In this document: positions 1-35,500 of the stretch, one piece after another
Layout: each line of letters opens with the position of its first letter
How positions within the stretch are numbered: the first letter of the stretch is position 1
Assembly (NCBI GenBank): GCA_964057225.1
Contig: OZ059899.1
Coordinates: 16,306,001-16,370,000 of the forward strand
DNA length: 64,000 nucleotides
Direction: 5' to 3'
Source: Auanema rhodensis
Taxonomy: Eukaryota; Animalia; Nematoda
Made by a program: the position numbers and the translations under genes
Notes under the pieces: model-generated
What the model was told of the DNA's origin: nothing
Seen by the model: only the letters and a program-made list of their open reading frames with translations
Database searches by the model: none

Positions 1-508
1 AAAAATAGATAATCCGAGAATAGGTATTCAGATGTGTAGAATCTGAAATTCCGGGTTAATCTTGGCTAGGAATTCTCCTGTTTCCGGAAAAACGGTTTAT
101 ATCGAGATCATCCACAAGATTTGTTCACAAACAAGTTCAGGCTGTGGGCACTGTGTGCCCGGTGAATGTTCCTTTTTCTCAAAAATTATCAACTAAAATC
201 AAAAATAGATAATCCGAAAATAGGTATTCAGATGTGTAGAATCTGAAATTCCGGGTTAAATTTGGCTGTTTTACTTTTCCGGAAAAACGGTTTATTTCGA
301 GATCATCCACAAGATTTGTTCACAAACAAGTTCAGGCTGTGGGCATTGTGTGTCCGGTGAATGTTCCTTTTTCTCAAAAATCATCAACTAATATCAAATA
401 AAGATGATCCTAGGTTGGGTATTCAGATGTGTAGAATCTGAATTTCCGAGATTTGGCTCGAACCTCTCGTGGGTTTAAAATGGGTTTATGTGGAGCCCAT
501 CTACAAGG
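1..508. repeat. ~195-200 bp tandem repeat (minisatellite or MITE-derived array), truncated by the window start
   Basis: Unit 1 is 1-200 and unit 2 is 201-395; both begin aaaaatagataatccga and share gtattcagatgtgtagaatctgaa and cacaaacaagttcaggctgtgggca. A degenerate partial third unit spans ~396-508. Confidence 0.9.
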
Positions 509-740
509 TCAAAAATATATATAAATGCATATGTTTGCTTAGAAATATAAATAACTTCATAATAGTTATAATTGCACAGCGATATAAGCCATTAGTGAAA
601 TAATTGATCAGTGTCAATTGCGTTTCAAATATTTCATCTAACATATCAAGTAAGAAATGTGATTATTCCAATAATACTTTTAGCTTCGCAAATTCCTACA
701 TTTAGTTTCACTCCTTGCTTGGATGAGATTCATGTGGTAA

Positions 741-2346
741 TTAAAGGCTTCCTCTTAGTAATTTGTCGTATTCTTTTGAAATAGAATCTGAAAGAACATA
801 GTGAGACAGAAAATAATGTGATACCAACTTAAGATGCAAATGGTTCGGATAGCATATGGGCACCAACTCCATAAGATTCTTTTCTATTTCTTCGCTTGTA
901 TCGGGAACTGTGTAAATTGATATTGAATGCACTGATTTGTAATGTCTCCTAAGCTGAAAAAAAACAAATAAAAATGATTATTTATATATATAAACAAATA
1001 CCCCATATACATTATAAAAATGTTTTCCGCACTCTTTACATTTTCGGGATGGTTCTTTGTAATGAGTTCGAAGATGTTCTGCGAGTGAGAATGTACCATT
1101 TCTTCTACAGTATAATATAGTCTTATTACAATCCTATACAACATTGCACACTAATAAAATTAATAAAACACAAACCTTATATTGACACCGAATATGATAT
1201 TTCTCAGAGCAAATGGGCACTGCAGCTTCAGATGTATTACTGCCCTTGTTTTTTTTTGAGTTGACCTTAGATTTTTCACTGCTATCAATAAGTTCGGCTT
1301 CATCTTCATTATCCCTAAATGAAATAATCAAAAACATATTATAATTAACTTGATGAATACTTATGTACAACAGAATTGGCAATTAGAAAGGAGTTTGTAT
1401 TTTGAAGATCCGCCGTTAAGGGGCTGGTATCACTGAGATCATTAACTGGTGAAATAGTGCATAAGCTTTCTAAATTGTTGTAAATTACAAAATTTATTTA
1501 TAAATATATGCTAAAACTAACGATCAGACACACACGACAGGAAAGATAGTTCAGGATCTTCATTCAAATTTAATTCACTAAGTTTACAAATTAATTAAAA
1601 TATTCTTTTCAAAACGTACCCAGTTAATTTCTTACACTCATCAGTAGATGTTGATTGACCGAATATATCGGTTACTTGAAATATATCAGTGAACAGGGAA
1701 CAATTGATAACATTCTTATCCATCAGAGCTTGAATGCTATCTTGAGTACTTTCCTTTTTTGTTAATTGTTTTTCATTTTTTTCAATATCTTGTATAATAC
1801 TATTCAAAACTCCTTCAACAGCTATATCAATAGTATTGGTGCTATGCACTTCTGGCACTTGACTATCTTCCTTTAAGTTTTTATATAAGTTGCTTTCGTC
1901 TAAGTTATAATAATCCCGACCTAAATACAGTAAAATAATTAATTATCAAAACGGTTTAAAGCCGAATGTACCCATCACAGTGCTCATTTGGAACACTGGA
2001 GGCTGGTTATAATCACGTTCATATATGGGAGTTGAGCAATGCCATCCACTATATTCATGTGGTTGAATATTCTGATTCGTGTATTCATGATTCACAGATT
2101 CGACGTGTTTGAATGATTGATCATAAGCACCATTACAAGACTCCATATCTTGTTCATAGGCTGGGATTTTTAAAATTAGAAAATTATAGATACCAACAGA
2201 TTTCTATAAGTAATTAAGAAATTTATTCCAAAATGAAAATGGCAAATTACCATGAGACCGTCCAAAGATATTCTGTTTTCATTTATCCTGTTGACAGAAG
2301 TACCGAATATATTTATTTGAATATGATAATTCAAACTATTCATCAT
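741..2346 (-). CDS. HIM-8/ZIM-like double C2H2 zinc-finger protein, paralogue 4 (spliced)
   Basis: Exon 1 is 2346-2251 (MMNSLNYHIQINIFG...). Exon 2 starts at 2203 and contains WHCSTPIY. The finger region spans an exon ending at 1176, exon 1133-1002 and exon 953-741, reading IRCQYK|DCNKTILYCRRNGTFSLAEHLRTHYKEPSRKCKECGKHFYNVYG|LRRHYKSVH...LVPICYP. GT-AG junctions are in frame. Confidence 0.75.
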
Positions 2347-2427
2347 TTCTCTATTAATATAGAAGGCAGTGAAGTTCTGGGCTGACAGATCAGAGTTGAA
2401 GCAACCAACCAGGCTTTTTAAAAATTG

Positions 2428-2457
2428 TTTTCGTCTCGGGACCTTAAATTCAAATTT
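2428..2457 (-). promoter_or_regulatory. Conserved upstream motif of paralogue 4 (AAATTTGAATTTAAGGTCCCGAGACGAAA)
   Basis: Lies ~80 bp upstream of the ATG. Related motifs precede all four paralogues. Confidence 0.55.
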
Positions 2458-2655
2458 TTGAGCTTTATTGGCTGAACTTTTAAGAATTAAGAGCTGTCAG
2501 TGGAGGCATTGTAAATCTGATTTTTTTATACTAATAAGACATTAATTTGAAAACAATTTTGAATAAAAAATATTTATTACAGTATTGAATTCACAGCTTT
2601 AGGGATTAGAAAATTTGACCAAGTGTTGTACAATCCTATCAATTTAAGTAGATGA

Positions 2656-4499
2656 CTACATCTCGTCATCATTAAATTCGAAGTTGATGCTTCGACGCGT
2701 TCGGCTAAAATTATATCTATAACATAAGAGATGAGAACAAAAATTCTTCTTCAGATGATACTTTAAATGTGTATATTTGGGAAAACATATAGGAACCAAT
2801 TTGGATATTTGTTCTATAACAGATTTATTAGTCGAAGGGACGGTAAATGGTATTTCTTTATGCCGTACAATATGATGTTTCCGCAACTAAAAATTAACTT
2901 TACATTTATATATAGATACAGATAATACCGAATAAATAGAATAATAAGTAGCTGGGCATAGCGTGCACAATCGTGATTTTCTTGGAAGATGTTTACGTAA
3001 GTGCTCGCTTAGGTTGAGTGTACCGTTCTTTACTAAATAACTTAGTATAGAAGTACAATCCTAAGAATATTATACTATCACTTTTATGAAAAATAATTTT
3101 TCTAACCGGATATTGGCATTTAATACGAATTCTTTTCAATTTCTTAGCATTAATTGTTTTCGGTGATTCCTCCACATCGCTTTCCACTGTTAGCGATGAA
3201 GTATCCACAAAGCTCGTCACACTTCTGCTTAAAATTTCAAATTAGTTTCAGTGATCCAATATTCTTTATGCCTGCATATGGTTTCTTCCGCCTCTTCATC
3301 AGCCTTTTTTTCACATCTGGAATATAAATAACATGTATAAAAAGTGGATGGGTATGTACCGTTCCACAGTATGTTCATTGTTTTCAACACTAGCAACAGG
3401 TATATCTGGGATTATGACCTTAGATTTTTCACTGCTATCAATAAGTTCGGCTTCATCTTCATTATCCCTAAATGAAATAATCAAAAACATATTATAATTA
3501 ACTTGATGAATACTTATGTACAACAGAATTGGCAATTAGAAAGGAGTTTGTATTTTGAAGATCCGCCGTTAAGGGGCTGGTATCACTGAGATCATTAACT
3601 GGTGAAATAGTGCATAAGCTTTCTAAATTGTTGTAAATTACAAAATTTATTTATAAATATATGCTAAAACTAACGATCAGACACACACGACAGGAAAGAT
3701 AGTTCAGGATCTTCATTCAAATTTAATTCACTAAGTTTACAAATTAATTAAAATATTCTTTTCAAAACGTACCCAGTTAATTTCTTACACTCATCAGTAG
3801 ATGTTGATTGACCGAATATATCGGTTACTTGAAATATATCAGTGAACAGGGAACAATTGATAACATTCTTATCCATCAGAGCTTGAATGCTATCTTGAGT
3901 ACTTTCCTTTTTTGTTAATTGTTTTTCATTTTTTTCAATATCTTGTATAATACTATTCAAAACTCCTTCAACAGCTATATCAATAGTATTGGTGCTATGC
4001 ACTTCTGGCACTTGACTATCTTCCTTTAAGTTTTTATATAAGTTGCTTTCGTCTAAGTTATAATAATCCCGACCTAAATACAGTAAAATAATTAATTATC
4101 AAAACGGTTTAAAGCCGAATGTACCCATCACAGTGCTCATTTGGAACACTGGAGGCTGGTTATAATCACGTTCATATATGGGAGTTGAGCAATGCCATCC
4201 ACTATATTCATGTGGTTGAATATTCTGATTCGTGTATTCATGATTCACAGATTCGACGTGTTTGAATGATTGATCATAAGCACCATTACAAGACTCCATA
4301 TCTTGTTCATAGGCTGGGATTTTTAAAATTAGAAAATTATAGATACCAACAGATTTCTATAAGTAATTAAGAAATTTATTCCAAAATGAAAATGGCAAAT
4401 TACCATGAGACCGTCCAAAGATATTCTGTTTTCATTTATCCTGTTGACAGAAGTACCGAATATATTTATTTGAATATGATAATTCAAACTATTCATCAT
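2656..4499 (-). CDS. HIM-8/ZIM-like zinc-finger protein, paralogue 3 (chimera of the paralogue 4 N-terminus and paralogue 2 fingers)
   Basis: The ATG at 4499 opens the same first exons as paralogue 4. The C-terminal exons (IKCQYP|DCTSILSYLVKNGTLNLSEHLRKH...CTLC...|LRKHHIVRH...LVPICFP) are identical to paralogue 2. Confidence 0.65.
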
Positions 4500-4580
4500 T
4501 TCTCTATTAATATAGAAGGCAGTGAAGTTCTGGGCTGACAGATCAGAGTTGAAGCAACCAACCAGGCTTTTTAAAAATTG

Positions 4581-4610
4581 TTTTCGTCTCGGGACCTTAA
4601 ATTCAAATTT
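4581..4610 (-). promoter_or_regulatory. Conserved upstream motif of paralogue 3
   Basis: Duplicated copy of 2428-2457. Confidence 0.5.
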
Positions 4611-4808
4611 TTGAGCTTTATTGGCTGAACTTTTAAGAATTAAGAGCTGTCAGTGGAGGCATTGTAAATCTGATTTTTTTATACTAATAAGACATTAATT
4701 TGAAAACAATTTTGAATAAAAAATATTTATTACAGTATTGAATTCACAGCTTTAGGGATTAGAAAATTTGACCAAGTGTTGTACAATCCTATCAATTTAA
4801 GTAGATGA

Positions 4809-6623
4809 CTACATCTCGTCATCATTAAATTCGAAGTTGATGCTTCGACGCGTTCGGCTAAAATTATATCTATAACATAAGAGATGAGAACAAAAATTCT
4901 TCTTCAGATGATACTTTAAATGTGTATATTTGGGAAAACATATAGGAACCAATTTGGATATTTGTTCTATAACAGATTTATTAGTCGAAGGGACGGTAAA
5001 TGGTATTTCTTTATGCCGTACAATATGATGTTTCCGCAACTAAAAATTAACTTTACATTTATATATAGATACAGATAATACCGAATAAATAGAATAATAA
5101 GTAGCTGGGCATAGCGTGCACAATCGTGATTTTCTTGGAAGATGTTTACGTAAGTGCTCGCTTAGGTTGAGTGTACCGTTCTTTACTAAATAACTTAGTA
5201 TAGAAGTACAATCCTAAGAATATTATACTATCACTTTTATGAAAAATAATTTTTCTAACCGGATATTGGCATTTAATACGAATTCTTTTCAATTTCTTAG
5301 CATTAATTGTTTTCGGTGATTCCTCCACATCGCTTTCCACTGTTAGCGATGAAGTATCCACAAAGCTCGTCACACTTCTGCTTAAAATTTCAAATTAGTT
5401 TCAGTGATCCAATATTCTTTATGCCTGCATATGGTTTCTTCCGCCTCTTCATCAGCCTTTTTTTCACATCTGGAATATAAATAACATGTATAAAAAGTGG
5501 ATGGGTATGTACCGTTCCACAGTATGTTCATTGTTTTCAACACTAGCAACAGGTATATCTGGGATTATGACCTTAGATTTTTCACTGCTATCAATAAGTT
5601 CGGCTTCATCTTCATTATCCCTAAATGAAATAATCAAAAACATATTATAATTAACTTGATGAATACTTATGTACAACAGAATTGGCAATTAGAAAGGAGT
5701 TTGTATTTTGAAGATCCGCCGTTAAGGGGCTGGTATCACTGAGATCATTAACTGGTGAAATAGTGCATAAGCTTTCTAAATTGTTGTAAATTACAAAATT
5801 TATTTATAAATATATGCTAAAACTAACGATCAGACACACACGACAGGAAAGATAGTTCAGGATCTTCATTCAAATTTAATTCACTAAGTTTACAAATTAA
5901 TTAAAATATTCTTTTCAAAACGTACCCAGTTAATTTCTTACACTCATCAGTAGATGTTGATTGACCGAATATATCGGTTACTTGAAATATATCAGTGAAC
6001 AGGGAACAATTGATAACATTCTTATCCATCAGAGCTTGAATGCTATCTTGAGTACTTTCCTTTTTTGTTAATTGTTTTTCATTTTTTTCAATATCTTGTA
6101 TAATACTATTCAAAACTCCTTCAACAGCTATATCAATAGTATTGGTGCTATGCACTTCTGGCACTTGACTATCTTCCTTTAAGTTTTTATATAAGTTGCT
6201 TTCGTCTAAGTTATAATAATCCCGACCTAAATACAGTAAAATAATTAATTATCAAAACGGTTTAAAGCCGAATGTACCCATCACAGTGCTCATTTGGAAC
6301 ACTGGAGGCTGGTTATAATCACGTTCATATATGGGAGTTGAGCAATGCCATCCACTATATTCATGTGGTTGAATATTCTGATTCGTGTATTCATGATTCA
6401 CAGATTCGACGTGTTTGAATGATTGATCAGAACAGGGTTCGTTATGCGGAACTTCCATAATAACAAAATCAAAAACTCCAACGGACTTCTAAATGGAAAA
6501 GGATGTTTCAATCAAAGATTACGATGTTACCAGTATATATTCTAAAGATATACCATTCCTCTTGATTTTGTTTATTGATTCGCCGAATATATTTATTTGG
6601 ATATGGTAATTCCCAAAAGTCAT
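4809..6623 (-). CDS. HIM-8/ZIM-like zinc-finger protein, paralogue 2 (spliced)
   Basis: ATG at 6623: MTFGNYHIQINIFGESINKIKRNGISLEYIL|KSVGVFDFVIMEVPH...WHCSTPIY. Fingers are C-x4-C...H-x3-H and C-x2-C-x12-H-x4-H, followed by LVPICFP. Stop at 4809. Confidence 0.75.
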
Positions 6624-6714
6624 TGTAGTGAAGAAAACTCCAGGAAGAACAACAAAAAAATCAAATCCAGGTAGAAGCTTAAATAGCTCAAATCACTTAT
6701 GTTATGTTAATTTG

Positions 6715-6748
6715 TTTCGCTGCGGGACCATATACGCAAATTTGAATT
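6715..6748 (-). promoter_or_regulatory. Conserved upstream motif of paralogue 2 (plus strand tttcgctgcgggacc...aaatttgaatt)
   Basis: Lies ~90 bp upstream of ATG 6623, with the same GGTCCC-x-CGAAA core plus TTTGAA. Confidence 0.5.
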
Positions 6749-7062
6749 GGCTTCAATCTCTTACCAACTACCTGTAACCAATTATCCAAATTTCAATCGG
6801 ATTTATCAAGAATTTCAAAAATTATTTTTAACAAATGAATTCATAAAACCAATTGAGGTAATCTATATGAAAAGAGATTAGAAATATAAATATCTTTATT
6901 ACGGGATTAATAGCACAGGGATAGCTTGTTCATTTAGTAGTAAATGTATAAAAAATATAGTGGTGATTTTTGCTCTTAGGCCGTACTTCCAGAATGAGTT
7001 GCATGTCTTAAACGTTTGAAATGTATTCTATAAATAAGCTGTGATACTAATGAAAGTAAATA

Positions 7063-8858
7063 TTAAAACCTAAGATGAACATGGTCTGGGAAACAAATTG
7101 GTACTAAGCTCTTCAGTTTTATTTCGTCACTAATATTGGTCTCCGGGCATGTATATAGCATATTTTTATGCATCCGATAATGATGTCTTCTTAACTAAAA
7201 AAGAACAGTAGGGTTACAAGAAAAGTTTGTTATCAACCAAATAAACATTATAAAATCGACTTTTACAATGTGTACAGTATCTGCTGGGTCGGTCCAGGTG
7301 CGAACGGATATGCTCGGCAAGCCTGAAGGTACCAGCCTTCAATGAATATGACACGGACTTGTTACAGTTCTGCAAAATAATTGTTGAACATCGAATGTGT
7401 TGAATAACCTACCGGGTATTTACATACAACCTTTGTAATTGAGTTTTTCACATCCACTCTAGAAATTTGTTCGCTGTGAGGTGAATCGTTAAAGCAATAT
7501 GTAGGCATATTACCTATTCTGACTTTCGGATATTTTTTTCATAACGAAAGGATTGCTTTCCGGATTCTTCGGTTTTGAACACTTCTTTTCGCAATAGCTC
7601 AAAATTAAACTTCTTTAAAAACTCTCGCCAAAACTCACCTTTTTTTTTGTCTAGAAGTAATAAATGAGTGTGAGAAAAATATATAAAATAAAATGTTTAC
7701 CTCTTTCGCAAGTTCGGCAAAGAAGATAAACTTGATAAGGACTCAGAAGAATCAGTACATTTGGTTTGTTTTTTGTTTTCAGGTTTTTCTTTAAGTTCCT
7801 CATTAACAGAACTGAAGCTGCTAATATATTTGGGAAAGTTCAAATTTCAGTTAACAAACCAGATAGTTCCAGCTTTAACCGGTTCAGCGCATTTTTTAGT
7901 ATTTAGATTATTACATTCTTCGTCAGGATTTTCATTTAATAGACTTCTAAAATTAAAAAAAATTATATTAGAATCATCATCGACTAAACATACTGATCAT
8001 CTATACAGGAACTACTATGTACATCTGTTTCTAAAATAAATAAATAAAGCTTCTCCTAGACAGAATAAAACATACGTGATGATACGCAAGATTGAAATGA
8101 AACATCTAAATTTTTATCCAAAAACTCAGTTGTTTCTAGATCACTAGAAACTTTTGAATTTTAAAATGAAATTTGATTTCTTATTACCAAATATAATCTC
8201 CAGCCGAGGAATCCATTCCATTTTCAAGTGATTTTCCCAAGTCAAAATTACTAATTTGAATTGTGTCTGTGAATAAAGAACAGTCTATTAGACCTTTTGT
8301 AGATGAGTGGGGAATTTTCATATTCGATCCAGCAATCTGCTTTTCATCTTGTTCTATGCGTGAGACTATGTTCTTCATAATATCCTTAACTGTGTCTTGA
8401 GAATGATTTCTTGACATGTAGTAACTTTCTTTATTTTCAGCGATTCTTAGATCGTTGTCTGATAACAGGAATTAAAAGTTTTCAAAAATTCCCACTAACT
8501 ATTTCGAACGAAGCTAATGTCAAATCGAGGAGCATGGTGCGGACTATACAATGGCGTTGAGCATTGCCAGCTTTTTGTGTTTTGAGGTGACAGTCTATTC
8601 TCGATAGGAGTATTGATCCCACTAAAGCTAGATTGATCGAAATGCTCATGATAGACTTTCGAATAATTATGATTTTGATTGTGTGGAATTTCCAGAATCA
8701 CAAAGTTGTAAATACCATTTGATTTCTAAATAAAATATAATATTTAGTTCAATATATAATTTTACCAAAACTTGATCGAGTGATATATTATTTTCAACTA
8801 TATCATCAATGGCGTCACCAAATATGTTTATTTGAATATGAAAATCGTGACACTTCAT
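7063..8858 (-). CDS. HIM-8/ZIM-like zinc-finger protein, paralogue 1 (spliced)
   Basis: MKCHDFHIQINIFGDAIDDIVENNISLDQVL|...WQCSTPLYSPHHAPRFDIS...KVVCKYP|NCNKSVSYSLKAGTFRLAEHIRSHLDRPSRYCTHCKSRFYNVYL|LRRHHYRMH...LVPICFPDHVHLRF*. Middle exons were not all resolved. Confidence 0.7.
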
Positions 8859-8927
8859 TGAACCTGAAATGCTTAAACTTCGAGAAAATTAAATTAAATA
8901 ACAAGCATGTTTCAGATTAATTCAATT

Positions 8928-9257: not shown

Positions 9258-11472
9258 TTAATTATTTTTTTTAGTAAAAATATCATCTTCATCTTCTTCA
9301 ATATCGCTGCCGAAATCACTGTCAAAATCAATGCCATCAAAGGCGGAATCGTCATCAGAATCCTGATCTCTGGACCAGTTATATGCTGATGCTCGTCGTA
9401 ATTCTTAAATATTATGAATAATTTCTAAATTTACCGTTCTAAATTGATTGTTTTACCTGTAGGATCACGCTCCAACACATCCTTTAATTCCTTTGTTGTC
9501 TTATTATCAGGAGGCAAAATTTCGGCGACAACTCGTAACATCTTCGGTGTACTCAAACATGAGATCTTGCAAGTTTCTTCCAACCCCTTGTCTTCAGTCT
9601 TAGATTCCTCAGTTTTCTTATCATTTTTCAACATTTGTCTATATATTTCATTCATAATTGTTTAAATAAATCAAATAAACATACGCTGCTTTTTTCTTGA
9701 GCAAAGCTTGAGCTTGGGGATAATACTTAATAACATCATTCAAATCTTCTTTTCCTAATACGAAAAGAGTTGTATATCCTTTAGCTTTAATAGAAGCAGT
9801 TCGTCTATTATTCCCACCAATAGCCAATAAACTATAAATTTTTCGACTTTAATCGATATATCATGTTGAGCTTACCTAATTTCTCCAAATACTGATCCTT
9901 GAGTTAGTTCAGCAAATACTTTTTCATTGTTATCTCCACCTACTACTTGAAGCACACCTTGATTAACGATATACATTTCTTTTCCTACATCTCCCTTAAA
10001 TAAAGAAAATTTAAAAATTTTTCAAATTTCAAGAATAGCAAACCTTTTTACAAACAAGATCACCTGGTAAAAAGATAACAGGTCTAAGTTTAAGAACAAG
10101 ATCTCGAAGTAATGCTCGATCACAATCCTAAATTGAAATATAAAATATAAATATTTATCATTGAAATTTTAATATATACCTGGAATAATTGAACTTTACT
10201 CAAAGTATTATAATGAACAGATAAAGCTAAATCAGTTTGAAGTTTAAGCGGAAGTTTCTCAATTAATTTCTTTTCATCTAAATATTAGTTATTAGTTATC
10301 AGAATATTATCTAACAACAATGTACCTAACGTCTTCTGTTGTTGCCATGTATAGATGAACCAATCACGAACTCTATCAGTTAATTCTTTTGTCAAATTCA
10401 ATCGTTTGCATTCTCCTAATGCTAAATCCATTTTTCTTTGATATTCCTCTCTATTACGATTTGCATTTGATACGATATCACGAATCTAAATAAGATGGTT
10501 GGACGTCAAACTTCAGAATCTGAGAATTACTTGTCCAAGCAGCAAAGCGAATACAAACACACCCATCATCCAAGAGAATGTCATATAAATATATCTGAAG
10601 ATAGAAAACATGTTTAGTTTTCCGGTATACAACATTTCAAAAAAAATCATCTTAAACTTAAAGCTTACTCAATAACATTAGTTGGAGCTGGATTATTACC
10701 GGTTGATGTAGCAACAGCAGCTGTGAAATAGAAACACCGGATATAAGCATTTCCTGGTTATATGAGATGAGAATTCAGAAATTTCGATGATTACCGTAAT
10801 ACCTTGATTGTTATAAACCCATTTATTCAAGTAATATTTTCCATTTTCCATATAAGCTATTTGACCAAAAGCTTGCCAAGCACTCAACATATAGTATATG
10901 CAACTATTACAATGAATTATATAAACCATATATGATAATGTTCGAGCTATTCTTAATTATATTGTGTTATGAAGCTTAATCTCAATGAAATGTGCTCAAA
11001 CCTAATAGCGTATGGGTTTGAGACAGCATTATCCAACATATCGAATAAAGCCCAGAAAGCATCAATCTGAATAAGTTTAATATTTCAAGTTTCAACTTCT
11101 TTAGCATTTACTTTGAGAATTCGATTTGCCCGGAATATAGCAATAGGACCAAAAAAGATATATGCTAGATCTATTGGTAGAATACTGATGAAATCAATGA
11201 AAAATAGGCGACTTCTACGATAGTTTTGTCTCATTTCTCTGGGATCAGACTACAAATTTTCAAATTTACATTTACAACTGAGAATAAGAATAATGAAAGT
11301 TGAATACAAAATTCTTACAATAGATCTTCCTCCTCTCATAAATCGAAGACGAGGTTTGATAAGTATCATATCAATAAGATATATACCATCAGATATATAA
11401 TCAACTGTCATCCAATAGGCTATATTAGTTTTGGTCTAAAACTTGATTTTGAAAACTTATTCAAATACTATA

Positions 11473-11541
<69 letters not shown>

Positions 11542-12424
11542 TATATCATACCTGATATGGATAACTACTTCGTAAAGGAACACAAAAAGCATTATAAAGA
11601 AAGGCTGAAGTTACAAATGCTAGCCATATCATATAGAATTTTCCTTAAAAACACTTCAAGTTTTATAGGAAATCACGAAAAACTCAGACCATATTGATGA
11701 ATACTTTCAGGTAAAGGATTACATCTTCTACGTGTTTCATCTGAAACATCAGCTGTTTTCTGAAAATAAGAAAATAAATTGAATAATATCATCAAAATTA
11801 ATAAGAAAAACATTAATTGTTTCTTGTTATGTCATCTTGGTTCTGATGTTTCAAGAGTCAAATATTCATACCTGTAAACCAATTAAAGACATTAAACTTG
11901 GTCTTTTCTCATCTTTTGGAACAACTGAACTAATTATTGAAAGATTATCATCTGGTGTTTCTTTTAGCAATGTGTCTCGTACTGTAGATGTACGACGTTG
12001 AACCTTAATAAGCACGAAATAGGAGGTTGACGAAGAAAAAAAAGAAGAAGAACCGTACCTCTTTCGCTAATACATGCAATCTCTCCTTCATTATGAATGA
12101 TATTTGGGAGCTGACATCAAAATCACTGTTAAAGCTACTGCTCATCATGGAAGCACGTCGGTATGATATGTTAGCATCATCTAGTTCATCTGAACCTCAT
12201 AAGCTATTAAAAGAAGTTTTGTATTTACCTATGGGAAGTCCATCTTCATCTTCCACCTGAATAGCAATTTGTGCTGGTGGTTGTTGGATCTTAGGAATAC
12301 TCGGTGCGCGAGCTGAAGCCTGAGCTCTGAAAAAAGTACAATCAGTAACTTTAGCTGGAAAAGAGGTCAATGAAGTACTAGACTTACGAGTCAATTGAAA
12401 ATCTAGGACTGAAGTCATCATCAT
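9258..12424 (-). CDS. tax-2: Cyclic nucleotide-gated channel beta subunit (multi-exon)
   Basis: Spliced peptides include [11 protein letters not shown]|[26 protein letters not shown]|[20 protein letters not shown] and [25 protein letters not shown]. The CNBD reads [10 protein letters not shown]...GSVFGEI|[13 protein letters not shown]. An acidic tail ends at stop 9260-9258. Confidence 0.9.
11477..11538. repeat. (TA)n microsatellite in a tax-2 intron
   Basis: About 30 TA units. Confidence 0.95.
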
Positions 12425-29500: not shown

Positions 29501-32500
29501 GAATCAAAAATGAGGATATGGAATTGATTTGTTTTTAACAAGATCTGAGGTTATGTAACAATCTCGGGGATATTTTTTGATAATCTAAACTTCTACAAAG
29601 CTGATACAGATGTTTCTTCCAATATACAAAAATTCGCGCGCTGTATATAGGAGGCATCCGTTTTGTAGAGGAGTATCATATCAAATTGAAATATACAAGG
29701 GGAGTAGATTAATATTAAAACAATTTAGGACATGAACAGATTTTACTCATAAAACTTAACGAGCCCATGATGGAGCATCCTGGGTCTTGTCTGAAGTGCT
29801 AGAATGGTAGGTGGTGTATTCAGCTAATGGATCAGTTTGGCTTTTCCGTAGTTCGGAAGGATTTCCTGCCCAATTGATGGTTTTAGTCCAGGTACGAGTA
29901 GTGGAAGATCCTTCAGGATGGCTTCCTCCAGGAGAAGGAGCGCTCTGTCCAGCAGTAGCATTGTTAAGCTCTTCGATAGACATATTGAGACCTTCCATTA
30001 GGCGTTTGGCAGAGTCTCCAGTAACCATCTTCATGTGAACAGCCTTTGGAATAGAATAACGTCTTCCAGTTTCAGGATGAACGAATTCTCCGGTAAGGAC
30101 ATCGAGGAGGCCTGTTTCAGCAGCTTCACGTACACTGACCCTGCGGTGATCACTGGGACTTTCAATAATCTTTTCGTCAGTATCGAATCTGTTAGCTTCC
30201 AAGCGACTCAAAAAATCGTGGTGTAAATCGGCGAGAGCAGAAGGATCTTCAATGATACTACGAGCACGATCTCCAATACTGGTTTGGCTGTGACGCATAC
30301 GAACAGAGAGAGCAGGTTCTTGTTTCTGGGGGGTAAGACGGGTAACGGTGGTTTCTTCACGGAATTTTGGAACGCTGGTACGGCTGCCACGATTTCCAGC
30401 GTCAAGGTTCTCGATTCTGAACTTATATCCTTCAGCATCACGGCGCTTCACAGCTTCAGTTACAGCTTGAGCAGCTTGCATTGGAGAGTCAATTAATGCA
30501 ATCAATCCAACCTTCACAGCTTCCTTAAGCTTGAGCTTGGAGTGCCCCGCATTAAATTTGCCATCGTTATCAATTTTTCCGCGAGAAAGAGCTTCACGAA
30601 GAGTCATGGTCTGACTACTATCAAGATCATGAAGAAGAGAATCTCCATCAATAACATCACGATCTACAGCATCACGGAAAGTGAGGTAAAGACCAGTCTT
30701 TTTATCACGAATACGTCCCGAGTTCTCATCAAATTCCTCAGAATTGAGAACAACAGTGAGGTTCTTTTCATCAGCTCCTTCAATAGATTCAACATTTCCA
30801 GTATCGATATGTCCTTCTTCAATAGCTTGAGCAATGGTCATTTGGCGTCCAGTATCGGGATCAGAGAAAATGTTGGCACGAACATCAATAATGCCCTTTC
30901 CAAGAGCTTCAGCAAAGTTCATCTTATCAACACGACGAAGCTTCTCTCCAATGTCAGATGGTATACGGCCATCTTGTACAGCCTTCGCGATAGGAACAAT
31001 ACTTTGACGAGAAAGTTGGATGGTACGGTTCTTGGGGTCAATTAATTTCGAATCAACAGCTTCAATAAGATTAAGTTGACGATGGGTACGGTAATCTTCA
31101 ACGAATGGCTTTGTGATCAACTCATAGGTGCTACGGTCAATAAGCCCTCTTTCAACTGCGTCATTGAGATCAACGTCCTCTCCGGTGATGGGGTTATGGT
31201 AGCAGCGTTTTTGGGTGTTGATTAGGCCATCATTCAAAGCAGTGGTGACTGGAACACGGTTACCCTTGCTAGGATCGAAAACTCCGTCACTGGTAATGGC
31301 TTGCCAGACAGGCTTGATGATGTCAAGCCAAGTAAGTGGTTTGCGAGTTAATGGGTCACGCACTTCTCCAGTTCGACTGTCAATGATTCCAAGTTCAATT
31401 GCCTTGCTGATAGTGATTCTTTCGTTGTTGCCAGGATTGCAAACTCCCTTATTTAAAGTTTCAGAGAGAGTGACATCAACAAGACCCATGTTGGCAGCTT
31501 GTGTGAGAGGGATGGCTTCTCCGCTCTTAGGATTACGGTAGGTAAGCTCACGAATATCAATAATTCCGGCTTGAATAGCATCCTGAAGACTGATTTTCTC
31601 CATGTGAGAGTCCATTACTCCTTTATTGACAGCGTTTTGAATGTTTGATCGGAATACAGAGTAGGTCTTGGTCATCTGCTTTCCTTTCTTATCAACGCGG
31701 GCTAAGCCAATACGCTTGGCATCTTCCAAACTCATAATACGATTGTTGCGCTTGTCGCGGATACGATCAATACCAACAAATTCAGCATGAGGCTCAAGTT
31801 CAACAGATTGAACCTGAGAAGTACTCTTGACAGAAGTCTTAGTTTCCGTTACAAAGGGATCTCCGTGCATTTGGATGGTGAATTTCATTCCAGTGCTGGG
31901 GTCAACATATTCTCCCTTTTCAACACCTCCTTCACCTCTGACAACTTTTACCATGACTTGCTTTCCTCCTCCAAGATCAACGTATTCGTGACGTCCGTCT
32001 TTACTTGCTGCAACCTGAGCTGGAACAAATGGAGTAAGCTGAAGTTTTTGCTCAACAATACGATGACTTTGGGTTGGCTTGCTAGTAGACCCAGCGCTAG
32101 CAATGAGTCCACTGGTAAGAGCGGATGGGAAACTTGTGCTCTCATTAGTTTGTTGATTATGAACTAGTCCACGTTCAGGATCCACAATACGACGAGTAAT
32201 AGCCTCTCGATAGCTAAGCTCTTCTCCGTTAGCTGGGTCACGTACAACTACAGAGTGCTGATCAACGATGTTCTTGTTTAAAGCCTCGTGAAGGGGTACT
32301 TGTTTTCCGTTGTTGTCATAATGTCCAGTAGAAAGATCGAGTCTACCAGAAAGGAGTCCAGAATCCAAAGTATCTCCCATAATCTTTCCCTTGAGAATAC
32401 CAGCCTTGAGAGCGGATTGGAGATCATGCTTCTTGTTGTTAGCTGTATCTTGTACGGTACCGGCCGTATCATCAACAATGCCTTCTTGAATAGCTTCTAG

Positions 32501-35500
32501 AAGAGAAATCTCTTTGTTACGACGGGTGTCAATTACACTGGAATCATAGGGATTGAACAGACCCTTAATGATGGCTTCTTTAAGAGTCATTTGCTTGTGA
32601 GTATCAGGGTTGGTGAACATTCCATTACCGGAATCATACCATCCGAGAGTCAAAGCTTTTCCAAGAGTGTTGTCGCTAAGAGGAGCTCCACTGGAGAGAG
32701 CTTCTTTCTTGGAGACCTGAGTGCGGGTCTGAGTCTTAACTGTAGTATGAACAGCATCACCGGCATTATCAGGTACACCTCCGTTTGGATAAAGGAAATG
32801 TTGTTGAGCAGCCTCAGTGAAACTTAAACGCTTTCCTTCAGATTTATTCAAGAAGAATGCACGTTTACTGTCGATAATTCCCCATTTTTCAGCCTCAACA
32901 AAGCTCATTTCACGTCCGGTCAGAGCATCTCTGACACTCAAATCTTCAGGTGTAAGCTTTCCAGCGTTCAAAGCACGCTCGAGTGTAAGTTTCTCTCCAG
33001 AATGATGATCAACTAACAATCCAGTGGTAGCATCAAATGACCACACTTGTTCTTGTTCCTCGATGATTGGTTGACCGACTGGACGGAAGCTGATGACAGG
33101 TCCTGATCCGGTAGGTATTTGAATAATCTTCTTGGCTTGGTTGTTGTAAGGAACAAGTGGCTCAGCTTCAATAACGATAAGCTTCTCTTCAATAGCCTTT
33201 TCAATACTATTATTTCTTACAGATCCGTTCTTGGCCATAATGTTTTTATCGAGAGCTTCTTTAACACTGATCATTGCACCAGAGTTGTCTTTAACAGAAA
33301 TTGTAGCGGCATCGATAACACCAAGTTCAATTCCTTCAGCAAAATTGATATGACGATCAACGTTAGGAGCACTGATTTCACCGGTGGTAAGATCAATAAT
33401 ACCTTTGCGTTCAGCTTCGTAGATATGGTATCCAGAAGCTGGAACTTCGATAGCTCCTTTACCTCCAGTAATAGCACGGTAAGTGGAAACTCCACCAGGA
33501 CCTCCAAGAGCAGTCGTTTCAGTGGTGCGGACACGCTTGATTGTAGTAACGGATTCTTCAATATTTTTGTCTGGGTAGTATTTTGGAGCAAGTTGTTGAC
33601 CAGTTTCAGTGACAGACTCAGTGGTCTTTTCTTCAATAGTTGGTCCAACCCCTGCACTCTTGGATGGTACGATCCATTCGCTGTGTGGGTCAATCAGCCC
33701 TTGGCTCAAAGCATCATCTAAACTCATGTCAATATCTCCCTGACGGAAACGTTGAGTACGAGAATCAATTAAGCCTTGTTTCATAGCTTCTTCCAAGGTA
33801 ACCTTTACTTGATTTTCAGCAAGTTCGAGTCCAGTTTGTCCTGGTCGGCTCACTCTCTTCTTCTTTTCGACCTTCTTAACAGGTGTAATCAAGGAAGGAT
33901 GAACATCAAAGAGACCAGAAATGAGAAGAGCACCACGAAGGTTCACCATTCCAGCGAGATAGGCATCACGTGGAGAAAGTTCCTGTTTAGTATTTTTGTT
34001 GAAGAAAACAGCCTTTTGGTGGTCAATGATTCCACGGGAAACAGCTTGAATTAGGTTCAAAGTATAGTTACCCTTGTCGTCCTTAATTCCAACAGGCTTG
34101 TTGAGAAGTTCATGGAGAGCAGAATCAATGATTTTCTCAGAACTTTCTTGTTGAATTGGATAGCTATCACGGGTCGCAAGATCTACAACACGCTCGGAAC
34201 TGGTAAGGATGGCTTCAACATCAACAGCTTCATTGAAGCTTAAATTCTGGTCAGTCATTGTATTTCTAATACCCTTGACATCGAAAATACTGTGACGGAC
34301 ACGTTTAGTCAGAAGTCCTTCCCGTACGGCTTCGGGAATAGTAAATGTCTTCTGTTGCTTTTCGAGAATGATCAATCCATCGGCGCCAAGAATTCCGCGC
34401 TCCAGCGCCTCGGCAATGGAGATTACGTCCTTCTCGTCAGGATCCACAATATGACGAACTTCGGCATCAACAACACCAGCAGCAATAGCTTCTAAAAGTG
34501 TGTGACGATGCTTGGTTCCCCTGTCGATAAAGTGGTTGGTAGAGTCGATAAGATCTTTGGAACTCATTTCAGTGAGAGTCATTGGTTTACAGATAAGATG
34601 TTCACGATGGGCATCGCGTAGAGATATAGTTCTACGGCTTTGCAAATCAGTGAAGTTACCATTACGGACGCTAACAGCGTTACGAACCACTGCATCTCCA
34701 AGGGTGAGTCGGGAGTTATCGGAGGTATTGATAACTTCTGGAACATGTAGGTTCAACAAATTGTTTTGCTTGGAAACAGCTTCACGGAGGGTGAAAGTTT
34801 CATTAGAATTGCGATCAGAAAACTCTCCGTTGTTAGCGTTGATGAACTCGTTCTCAATAGCATCAGATAAAGTAGTGGCAATCATTGGGTTTTGGGGAGG
34901 TGTTACGATTTGAATGTATCCATGATAAAGAGCATCCTTGATTGGCATAGTTTCATTCGAATATTTTCCAGTGAATTGGCCAGTAGCAGTGTTAAGAATC
35001 TTCTGTTCAATAGCCTGGCTCAGAGGCATGGGTGGAAGTTTTAAGATTCCCATCTTGATCAGCTTATGTTGGGTATCAAAGTTAATGATTCCACGGCTGA
35101 CGCACTCATACATGGAGAGGATTTCTCCAGAGTTAATATCACGAAGTTGACGAATGTCTGGGTCATATAGACCAATTTGGATAGCATCCATTAAAGACAC
35201 ACTTTGCTTGGTTTCAGGATGGTGAATTCCCCAGTGAGTGTTAAGAGCTTCCTGGAAGCTACCATCGATGTAACCAAGTTCGGCAGCCTTCTCCAAACTA
35301 ATTCTGGAGCCAGATACCAGGTCGAAGAATTGTCCACCACCAGCATGAAGATCCAAAAGTCCTTGACGGACAGCTTCAACAAAAGTAAGAATTTCCCCAG
35401 TTTGCTTATGTAAAATTCCTTCCATTTCGTAAAATTGAGTTTTAGTTACTGTTTCCTCTTGGAACATCTGCATCTCATCCTCATGCTCAGTAATTTTGGC

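What the first reader, a model, noticed from the sequence alone, without database searches (positions are those of the whole stretch)
741..8858. Tandem cluster of four HIM-8/ZIM-like meiotic pairing-centre zinc-finger genes
Seen: splicing reveals four same-strand paralogues that the ORF track fragments. Each has a conserved N-terminus (HIQINIFG), a W-x-C-S-T-P-[IL]-Y motif, a helical segment (VEGVLNSIIQDIE / VKDIMKNIVSRIE) and two C-terminal fingers, C-x4-C-x17-H-x3-H (e.g. CNKTILYCRRNGTFSLAEH) and C-x2-C-x12-H-x4-H, followed by LVPIC[FY]P. Established: C. elegans HIM-8 and ZIM-1/2/3 are a tandem cluster of paralogues with two atypical C-terminal C2H2 fingers and PRFSTP motifs, each binding chromosome-specific pairing-centre repeats. 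The first-finger pattern (C-x4-C-N-x2-I-x-W-x-R/K-x2-G-x3-L-x-D-H) is recalled from memory. Inference: this is a divergent pairing-centre protein set with three distinct DNA-reading finger pairs. If the host is an early-branching Caenorhabditis or lies outside the genus, it extends the known range of this system.
Basis: partly seen in the sequence, partly recalled or inferred. Interest (0 to 1): 0.88.

Follow-up and report, generated by a model that had tools for sequence, protein, structure and literature searches.

The report
Auanema HIM-8/ZIM-like zinc-finger gene cluster
Four neighbouring, transcribed nematode genes (with only three different DNA-binding ends) encode proteins built like the C. 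elegans HIM-8/ZIM proteins that anchor chromosomes for meiotic pairing. They are most likely the Auanema members of that known family, and one copy is a very recent chimera.

Summary
Four same-strand (minus) multi-exon genes lie at 730-8858, and spliced RNA contigs from four public runs confirm most introns. All the reported motifs are present: HIQINIFG, W-x-C-S-T-P-[IL]-Y, a confidently predicted helix, C-x4-C-x17-H-x3-H plus C-x2-C-x12-H-x4-H, and LVPIC[FY]P. Positions 1260-4280 are 100% identical to 3413-6433 (period 2153 bp), so gene B is a chimera of A's N-terminus and C's fingers. There are only three distinct finger modules.

The HIM-8/ZIM reading is supported but not proven. With gene D's finger exon, the best match among solved structures is HIM-8 (8YV9, E 0.008), with ZIM-2 third. 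The alignment is ungapped across the atypical 17-residue-spacer first finger. Architecture, a single S-T-P motif and the four-gene cluster also fit. The tail domain gave no sequence match, gene B/C's finger exon gave none, and generic zinc fingers score as high over the canonical part. No structural test was possible, because spliced proteins could not be submitted.

The host is an Auanema (94% identity to Auanema sp. JU1783 in VAB-10), a clade V rhabditid. HIM-8/ZIM homologues are already reported in that clade, so this is a new member of a known kind. Earlier scan notes had flagged the 2153-bp repeat and named the genome Auanema rhodense.

The parts
6976..8858 (-). Gene D, 13 exons, 447 aa: 8858-8766, 8725-8500, 8458-8188, 8143-8076, 8030-7994, 7946-7860, 7811-7701, 7650-7639, 7597-7514, 7458-7413, 7369-7238, 7194-7070, 7027-6976
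   Evidence: Hand-built model. Nearly all joints, including the 12-nt micro-exon, are seen in spliced RNA contigs.
4809..6623 (-). Gene C, 11 exons, 452 aa: 6623-6531, 6488-6278, 6226-5926, 5883-5828, 5775-5667, 5620-5513, 5469-5425 (inferred, GC donor), 5377-5260, 5213-5082, 5039-4915, 4869-4809
   Evidence: Joints are confirmed, except those flanking 5469-5425.
2656..4499 (-). Gene B, 460 aa. Exons 1-2 are identical to A (4499-4404, 4356-4125). All later exons equal gene C shifted by 2153 bp. It is a chimera created by the tandem repeat.
   Evidence: An RNA contig joins the shared middle to the A/B-type exon 2 (table 5c).
730..2346 (-). Gene A, 9 exons, 415 aa: 2346-2251, 2203-1972, 1920-1620, 1577-1522, 1469-1361, 1314-1176, 1133-1002, 953-829, 787-730
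   Evidence: RNA contigs run on for 255 letters into A-specific sequence (loose end at 5568).
1260..6433 (.). Perfect tandem repeat: 2.4 copies of a 2153-bp unit at 100% identity, including introns and intergenic DNA
7168..7424 (-). Gene D ZF1 (C-x4-C-x17-H-x3-H) and ZF2 (C-x2-C-x12-H-x4-H), split by two phase-0 introns. Equivalent finger exons: 5213-5082 and 3060-2929 (C/B), 1133-1002 (A).
   Evidence: PDB best hit is HIM-8 8YV9. hhalign gives 96% probability.
6976..7167 (-). Gene D C-terminal tail (49 aa) carrying [YF]T[VC]P and L-x2-L-VPI-C-[FY]-P. Equivalents: 5012-4809 (C), 2859-2656 (B), 926-730 (A).
   Evidence: The hydrophobic-x2-hydrophobic-x3-C-[FY] spacing fits HIM-8 F319/I322/C326/F327 listed in PMC11605055. 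No HMMER match.
8552..8560 (-). The only S-T-P (Polo-box-type) motif of gene D, inside W-Q-C-S-T-P-L-Y. Equivalents: 6341-6333 (C), 4188-4180 (B), 2035-2027 (A).
6078..6137 (-). Helical segment (DIAVEGVLNSIIQDIEKNEKQL) in exon 3 of gene C, present identically in A and B. The D equivalent lies within 8458-8188.
   Evidence: AlphaFold2 on alignment A3: helix 27-68, with pLDDT 87-90 for residues 31-50.

Best explanation
These genes are the Auanema members of the nematode HIM-8/ZIM pairing-centre protein family.

Each protein has three parts:
- A fast-evolving N-terminal scaffold of about 300 aa. It begins with a conserved first ~45 aa, carries one S-T-P Polo-box docking motif at about residue 85, and includes one confident helix.
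- An atypical first finger (ZF1) with a 17-residue Cys-His spacer, followed by a canonical second finger (ZF2).
- A tail of about 50 aa.

Inferred mechanism, by analogy with C. elegans: ZF1, ZF2 and the tail fold into one unit that reads an 11-12-bp motif clustered on particular chromosomes. The phosphorylated S-T-P recruits a Polo-like kinase, which ties that chromosome site to the nuclear envelope for homologue pairing and synapsis in early meiosis.

The three finger modules differ at the base-reading positions, so they should read different motifs:
- ZF1 position -4 is R, S or N. Position -8 is A, N or N.
- ZF1 basic -9, Gly -7 and acidic -1, and ZF2 Arg -2, are kept.

Gene B arose by unequal crossing-over between the identical middles of A and C. 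It joins A's N-terminus to C's DNA-binding end.

What is shown: the gene structures, transcription, the motifs, the similarity to HIM-8/ZIM-2 ZF1, and the host genus. What is inferred: the fold of the tail, kinase docking, DNA targets and the meiotic role.
For: Similarity of ZF1:
- phmmer of D's 44-aa finger exon against the PDB puts HIM-8 (8YV9) first (E 0.0078), ZIM-2 (8YVA) third (0.0086) and ZIM-1 (8YVB) at 0.12. All align from residue 1 without gaps through the C-x17-H-x3-H-x7-C-x2-C frame (codes confirmed).
- A's exon aligns the same way at E 0.13-0.15.
- Profile-profile hhalign of the three window exons against HIM-8 plus ZIM-2 gives probability 96%, P 3.8e-9, over 38 ungapped columns.
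- With zinc ligands excluded, the ungapped similarity exceeds shuffles at z 5.1-5.2 for D, 3.9-4.2 for A and 2.2-2.7 for B/C.

Residue-level fit to the HIM-8 structure paper:
- [IV]-x-C-x-[FY]-x-[ND]-C matches I241-Q-C243-H-F245-x-N-C248.
- An aromatic residue sits at Cys+6. Basic -9, Gly -7 and acid -1 are kept in ZF1, and Arg -2 in ZF2.
- The tail's hydrophobic-x2-hydrophobic-x3-C-[FY] matches F319, I322, C326 and F327.

Architecture:
- The fingers lie at the extreme C-terminus with a 49-52-aa tail. HIM-8 has 63.
- Each protein has exactly one S-[ST]-P, at residues 81-89. HIM-8 has its only Polo-box motif at T64.
- Four same-strand genes sit 309-352 bp apart. C. elegans him-8 and zim-1/2/3 form a four-gene operon (PMC9071541).

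Context:
- The host is an Auanema, in Rhabditidae/Rhabditina, which on my own knowledge is clade V, where family members are expected.
- All paralogue types are transcribed and spliced.
Against: - E-values are weak, and B/C's finger exon gives no HIM-8/ZIM hit at E<=1.
- The tail exons give no hit to 8YV9/8YVA/8YVB, either as a profile or singly.
- Generic C2H2 proteins reach equal or higher hhalign scores over the canonical part of the exon. Only the spacer and the N-terminal half of ZF1 discriminate.
- ZF2 is H-x4-H here but H-x3-H in HIM-8.
- ZF2 position -5 is Tyr, not Arg. ZF1 -8 is Ala/Asn, not Tyr.
- The residue three before the S-T-P threonine is His/Gln. It is not the Arg that, from my own recollection, the CHK-2 consensus requires.
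- No bridging homologues were found. A scan of 1.84 billion proteins with D's finger exon found only generic poly-finger proteins.
- A fragment model of the finger exon was low-confidence and found nothing.
- The tissue of the RNA runs is unknown.
Confidence: 0.72

Rival explanations
1. They are a lineage-specific two-finger C2H2 transcription-factor family that only resembles HIM-8/ZIM through generic zinc-finger features. They regulate genes and play no role in chromosome pairing.
For: - Pfam recognises only weak generic zf-H2C2_2, zf-C2H2 and zf-BED signals.
- Generic finger proteins score as high as HIM-8 in hhalign.
- For A and B/C, the top PDB hits are ZNF568, Aart and ZBTB7A.
- The tail gives no sequence hit.
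- The Atlas returns only generic C2H2 clusters.
Against: - Generic fingers align only from column 6-12 onward. They cannot cover the 17-residue spacer.
- The only PDB sequences that align over the whole first finger without gaps are HIM-8 and ZIM-2, and ZIM-1 from its second residue.
- The exact ligand spacing C-x4-C-x17-H-x3-H was predicted in advance for this family, and it holds in all three modules.
- The single S-T-P, the C-terminal placement, the C-[FY] tail motif and the four-gene cluster all fit HIM-8/ZIM.
Confidence: 0.15
2. Gene B is not a real fourth gene. The 2153-bp perfect repeat is an assembly loop, or a structural variant present in only some individuals, so the true locus holds three genes (A, C and D).
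For: - The repeat is 100% identical over 3,021 bp, including introns and intergenic DNA.
- B contains no sequence or junction that is not also in A or C, so neither short reads nor RNA contigs can prove it exists.
- Contigs of all four runs break at the repeat boundary, 6429.
Against: - The layout is exactly what unequal crossing-over between two genes sharing an identical 868-bp middle would produce.
- Assemblers more often collapse perfect repeats than expand them (my own knowledge).
- A- and C-type ends are both transcribed.
Confidence: 0.3
3. The genes are decaying duplicates (pseudogenes) of a zinc-finger family and have no current function.
For: There is recent duplication and gene conversion. 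No homologues were found in the large protein libraries.
Against: - All four models have intact reading frames across 9-13 exons.
- They are correctly spliced and transcribed in four runs.
- Zinc ligands and core residues are invariant among paralogues that are only 34-47% identical.
Confidence: 0.03

Closest known systems
C. elegans HIM-8 (PDB 8YV9) and ZIM-1/ZIM-2/ZIM-3 (8YVB, 8YVA), the pairing-centre zinc-finger proteins
   Same: - Two C-terminal fingers, with ZF1 spaced C-x4-C-x17-H-x3-H and an H-x7-C linker.
- ZF1 residues are kept: NCN[KR], an aromatic at Cys+6, basic -9, Gly -7 and acid -1. ZF2 keeps Arg -2.
- A tail with hydrophobic-x2-hydrophobic-x3-C-[FY].
- A single N-terminal S-T-P motif.
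- Four same-strand neighbouring paralogues.
- A nematode clade V host.
   Different: - Only about 23-26% identity outside the zinc ligands in ZF1 (7-8 of 31 positions, genes A and D).
- ZF2 is H-x4-H rather than H-x3-H.
- ZF2 -5 is Tyr rather than Arg. ZF1 -8 is Ala/Asn rather than Tyr, and -4 varies (R/S/N).
- The link from ZF2 to the tail's Cys is 3 residues shorter.
- There is no Arg three residues before the S-T-P threonine.
- The N-terminal 45 aa are strongly conserved among paralogues.
- One paralogue is a recent chimera.
Canonical tandem C2H2 fingers (Zif268, ZNF568, ZBTB7A, TZAP)
   Same: ZF2, the H-x7-C linker and the helix of ZF1 resemble the canonical motif, with hhalign scores of 46-48.
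   Different: Canonical fingers have a 12-residue Cys-His spacer, no extra helical turn and no packed tail domain. They usually occur in longer arrays.
BED-type zinc finger (Pfam PF02892)
   Same: It has a long Cys-His spacer. One exon gave a weak match (E 0.18).
   Different: BED fingers have C-x2-C and an aromatic N-terminal signature. The match is far below the Pfam threshold and was seen for only one paralogue.

Membership tests
HIM-8/ZIM pairing-centre proteins | Two tandem C-terminal C2H2 fingers, the first atypical with a long Cys-His spacer (C-x4-C-x17-H-x3-H) and the second canonical | tested here: met
   All three distinct modules fit C-x4-C-x17-H-x3-H-x7-C-x2-C-x12-H-x4-H. ZF2 has one extra residue between its histidines.
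HIM-8/ZIM pairing-centre proteins | Detectable sequence similarity of the DNA-binding region to HIM-8/ZIM, in preference to other zinc-finger proteins | tested here: inconclusive
   - D: HIM-8 ranks 1st and ZIM-2 3rd in the PDB (E about 0.008).
- A: E 0.13-0.15, behind generic fingers.
- B/C: no hit.
- hhalign gives 96%, but generic controls score as high on the canonical part.
HIM-8/ZIM pairing-centre proteins | A C-terminal domain that folds back on ZF1-ZF2 into one structural unit | tested here: inconclusive
   - A conserved 49-52-aa tail has spacing that fits F319/I322/C326/F327.
- HMMER finds no match to the solved tails.
- The fold could not be predicted because the region is split by introns.
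HIM-8/ZIM pairing-centre proteins | An N-terminal Polo-box binding motif (S-pT-P) that recruits PLK-2 after priming by CHK-2 | tested here: met
   Each protein has exactly one S-T-P, in the conserved W-x-C-S-T-P-[IL]-Y. This is met at motif level only. Phosphorylation and kinase binding are not testable here, and the -3 residue is His/Gln rather than Arg.
HIM-8/ZIM pairing-centre proteins | Paralogues arranged as a same-strand tandem cluster or operon | tested here: met
   Four minus-strand genes lie 309-352 bp apart. The C. elegans operon is described in PMC9071541. Operon transcription was not tested.
HIM-8/ZIM pairing-centre proteins | Meiosis-specific germline expression and chromosome-specific foci at the nuclear envelope | not testable with these tools
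   Spliced transcripts are present in four RNA runs, but tissue and stage are hidden.
HIM-8/ZIM pairing-centre proteins | Binding to clustered 11-12-bp motifs (TTGG...TG) enriched at one region of specific chromosomes | not testable with these tools
   Only a 64-kb window is available. Loss of the ZF2 -5 Arg suggests the TTGG sub-site may not be conserved.
HIM-8/ZIM pairing-centre proteins | Host within the known range of the family (clade V nematodes other than Pristionchus) | tested here: met
   The VAB-10A exon is 94% identical to Auanema sp. JU1783 and 76% to strongylids. Lineage is, and the family's range from PMC8455136.

The most novel reading that the evidence does not exclude
Gene B is a real, expressed chimera made within the last few generations of this lineage by unequal crossing-over. 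If so, pairing-centre proteins here evolve by swapping whole modules, a kinase-scaffold N-terminus against a DNA-reading C-terminus, helped by gene conversion that keeps the middles identical. In Auanema rhodense such swaps could reassign which chromosomes are tethered. The X chromosome skips pairing in hermaphrodite oogenesis in this species. A 2026 preprint speculates that chromosome-specific central repeat blocks act as pairing centres. The swaps could therefore link this cluster both to those repeat blocks and to the sex-specific behaviour of the X.
Probability: 0.2. Interest if true: 0.7.

Novelty: new member of a known kind. Interest (0 to 1): 0.45.

Why it matters
Auanema rhodense has three sexes and unorthodox X-chromosome segregation, and it discards large satellite blocks from somatic cells. 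Authors working on it have suggested that an X-specific factor such as HIM-8 may be regulated differently between female and hermaphrodite oogenesis (bioRxiv 10.1101/205211). They have also suggested that chromosome-specific repeat blocks may serve as pairing centres (bioRxiv 10.64898/2026.08.27.747507). Neither text names the genes.

This cluster supplies concrete, RNA-supported gene models for the candidate pairing-centre proteins, with three distinct DNA-reading modules. That makes both ideas directly testable by tagging, ChIP or CUT&RUN against the repeat blocks, and knock-outs.

For the family itself, it gives a divergent out-group. It shows which positions survive (the ZF1 spacer, Gly -7, basic -9, acid -1, ZF2 Arg -2 and the tail C-[FY]) and which change. 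It also gives a live example of module shuffling by unequal crossing-over.

It does not extend the family's known range.

Tried and rejected
1. Scan of 1.84 billion representative proteins with D's finger exon. It returned seven generic poly-finger hits and no self hit.
2. Profile of the three finger exons against the PDB. It was swamped by multi-finger proteins through summed repeats, so it is not a useful discriminator.
3. Tail-exon profile and single tail exon against the PDB. No HIM-8/ZIM match.
4. Pfam on ten exons. Only sub-threshold generic finger hits.
5. ESM Atlas with the finger exon. Generic archaeal C2H2 clusters only.
6. The search for homologous proteins with exon 3. Nothing.
7. 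The search for homologous proteins with exon 3 aligned to a 286-aa padding exon, to widen the length window. It returned only homologues of the padding exon. Local phmmer of the spliced models against all fetched proteins found no relative.
8. Attempt to reach the orthologous cluster in Auanema sp. JU1783 through its vab-10 locus (L001). The cluster lies more than 10 kb beyond the fetched flank, and the next gene's spliced product could not be looked up.
9. AlphaFold2 on the 44-aa finger exon alone (pLDDT 64) followed by Foldseek against the PDB. Meaningless, because the fragment lacks the first cysteine and half of ZF2.
10. N-terminal exon profiles against the PDB. Nothing credible.
11. Look-up of the exact plakin-exon ORF. 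Not on record.
12. My first model of gene D joined 7701 directly to 7518. RNA contigs refuted it, and I replaced it with micro-exon 7650-7639, exon 7597-7514 and exon 7458-7413.

The spliced ZF1-ZF2-tail proteins were never submitted to search or folding tools.


Full report
**What is in the sequence**

The region 730-8858 carries four multi-exon genes on the minus strand. I built the models by hand from the reverse-strand sequence and splice signals. I then laid the contigs of four public RNA runs (X1-X4, one study, organism coded) on 4290-8900.

The contigs are spliced, with CT..AC ends on the plus strand, so the introns are minus-strand GT..AG. They reproduce almost every predicted joint of genes C/B and D. 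They also corrected my first model of gene D:
- After exon 7811-7701 comes a 12-nt micro-exon (7650-7639). It appears as ten inserted letters between 7701 and 7599.
- Next comes exon 7597-7514, supported by a piece length of 86.
- Then comes exon 7458-7413, supported by a piece length of 46-49.

Each gene also has a small 3' intron just after the LVPIC[FY]P motif. This moves the stops to 730 (A), 2656 (B), 4809 (C) and 6976 (D). One 45-nt exon of B/C (5469-5425, GC-AG intron) is inferred only from typical intron sizes and excess depth.

The proteins are 415, 460, 452 and 447 aa. Introns are 40-55 nt. Stop-to-start distances between genes are 309-352 bp.

**The repeat**

Positions 1260-4280 are 100% identical to 3413-6433. 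This is 2.4 copies of a 2153-bp unit. The consequences for the genes are:
- A, B and C share exons 2 (3' part) to 6 (5' part).
- A and B share exons 1-2.
- B and C share everything downstream, including both fingers and the tail.

This layout is what unequal crossing-over between A and C would give, provided their 868-bp middles were already identical (for example after gene conversion). B has no private sequence or junction, so neither RNA contigs nor short reads can prove it. All contigs break at 6429. An assembly loop or a polymorphic duplication remains possible; I put that at about 0.3.

There are therefore three distinct finger modules (A, B=C, D), three distinct first exons (A=B, C, D) and two distinct middles.

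All are present:
- x-[YF]-HIQINIFG at the start.
- W-x-C-S-T-P-[IL]-Y at residues 81-91. Each protein has exactly one S-[ST]-P.
- A segment that AlphaFold2 predicts as a helix with pLDDT 87-90, in an otherwise low-confidence exon.
- C-x4-C-x17-H-x3-H, then x7, then C-x2-C-x12-H-x4-H.
- A 49-52-aa tail with [YF]T[VC]P and LVPIC[FY]P.

Paralogues D versus A or C are 53-55% identical in the first 50 columns, 26-28% in the middle and 43-47% in the finger-tail region.

**Is it HIM-8/ZIM?**

Crystal structures of the HIM-8, ZIM-2 and ZIM-1 DNA-binding domains exist as 8YV9, 8YVA and 8YVB (PMC11605055), so the family could be tested against deposited sequences.

phmmer with gene D's 44-aa finger exon against 177,635 PDB sequences gave:
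- HIM-8 first (E 0.0078).
- ZBTB7A second.
- ZIM-2 third (0.0086).
- ZIM-1 at 0.12.

The HIM-8/ZIM alignments start at residue 1 (ZIM-1: residue 2) and run ungapped through the whole first finger into the second. Gene A's exon aligns the same way at E 0.13-0.15, but behind generic poly-finger proteins. Gene B/C's exon shows no HIM-8/ZIM hit at E<=1.

A profile-profile comparison of the three window exons with HIM-8 plus ZIM-2 gives 96% probability over 38 ungapped columns. As a control, the best generic finger proteins out of 1.84 billion score as high, but only from column 6 or 12 onward. The score alone therefore does not discriminate. The discriminating features are the 17-residue spacer and the N-terminal half of the finger.

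With the zinc ligands excluded, the ungapped similarity to HIM-8/ZIM-2 exceeds shuffles at z about 5 (D), about 4 (A) and 2.2-2.7 (B/C).

**Residue-level comparison with the structure paper**

Kept:
- [IV]-x-C-x-[FY]-x-[ND]-C, against I241-Q-C243-H-F245-x-N247-C248.
- An aromatic residue at Cys+6 (W254).
- A basic residue at -9 (K257), Gly at -7 (G259), Leu at -3 and an acid at -1 (D265).
- The H-x7-C linker, and ZF2 Arg at -2 (R292).
- A tail pattern hydrophobic-x2-hydrophobic-x3-C-[FY], which fits F319, I322, C326 and F327.

Changed:
- ZF1 -8 is Ala/Asn, where HIM-8 has Tyr258.
- ZF1 -4 is Arg, Ser or Asn, where HIM-8 has Arg262.
- ZF2 -5 is Tyr, where HIM-8 has Arg289.
- ZF2 is H-x4-H rather than H-x3-H.
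- The distance from ZF2 to the tail Cys is 3 residues shorter.

The tail exons give no HMMER match to the solved tails. That is a real gap in the evidence, although the paper itself says the tail is the most divergent part of the domain.

**Architecture and context**

HIM-8 is 361 aa, with the fingers at 243-298 and its only Polo-box motif at T64. Here the proteins are 415-460 aa, with the fingers 49-52 aa from the end and the single S-T-P at 81-89.

In C. elegans, him-8 lies in an operon of four related genes (PMC9071541). Here four same-strand genes lie about 310-350 bp apart.

The literature already states that HIM-8/ZIM homologues occur in many clade V genomes but not in Pristionchus (PMC8455136). 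It also states that their N-terminal scaffolds diverge fast (PMC9908027).

**Host**

The 1905-aa plakin-repeat exon of the neighbouring spectraplakin gene is 94% identical to an Auanema sp. JU1783 protein. It is 76% identical to strongylid proteins and 65% to Caenorhabditis proteins. Auanema belongs to Rhabditidae, Rhabditina.

The window therefore comes from an Auanema other than JU1783. This fits earlier scan notes that name A. rhodense (s1-373167, s1-373135), which I did not test at species level.

The family's known range is not extended. In the held papers I found no text that names these genes in Auanema. The A. rhodensis genome paper is cited by the study that surveyed clade V, so presence may already have been scored in a figure.

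**What could not be done**

Spliced proteins have no contiguous reference. The whole ZF1-ZF2-tail unit could therefore not be folded or searched, and full-length relatives could not be collected. I also could not reach the orthologous cluster of JU1783. Folding the finger exon alone was uninformative. The tissue of the RNA runs is hidden.

**Verdict**

I put family membership at about 0.8. I put family membership together with a pairing-centre role at about 0.7.

This is a new member of a known kind, not a range extension. The interest lies in the host's unusual X-chromosome meiosis and repeat biology, and in the recent chimeric paralogue.

Noticed in passing
window 6448 (RNA run X2, table 7): One RNA contig matches gene C's exon 1 and the start of exon 2 down to 6448. 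It then continues for 113 letters with sequence found nowhere in the window. This suggests a further paralogue or allele elsewhere in the genome that shares C's N-terminus.
   Followed up: partly
window 7639-7650 and 5425-5469: Gene D has a 12-nt micro-exon (ACAAAAAAAAAG), seen in RNA contigs. Genes B/C probably have a 45-nt exon followed by a GC-AG intron, inferred from intron sizes and depth only.
   Followed up: partly
window 1-462: Three tandem copies of a 195-200-bp repeat (73-96% identity) lie just downstream of gene A, at the window edge.
   Followed up: no
window 9431-12400, minus strand: The neighbouring gene has small exons that match the cyclic-nucleotide-binding domain (PF00027, E 2e-5 and 5e-3). 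It is probably a cyclic-nucleotide-gated channel subunit.
   Followed up: partly
window 14568-45328, minus strand: A giant spectraplakin (vab-10-like) gene with spectrin repeats, a GAR-type exon and a single 1905-aa plakin-repeat exon (29756-35473). That exon is 94% identical to Auanema sp. JU1783. The JU1783 annotation splits the gene into three models.
   Followed up: partly
window 44603-45328, minus strand; L001:733-1590: This stop-free exon was flagged earlier as a membrane-spanning spectraplakin isoform. It has clear homologues in many nematodes, including Heterorhabditis, Strongylus, Haemonchus, filariae and C. briggsae CBG15814, with E down to 1e-47. It is therefore a conserved alternative exon, not noise.
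   Followed up: partly
   Followed up: partly
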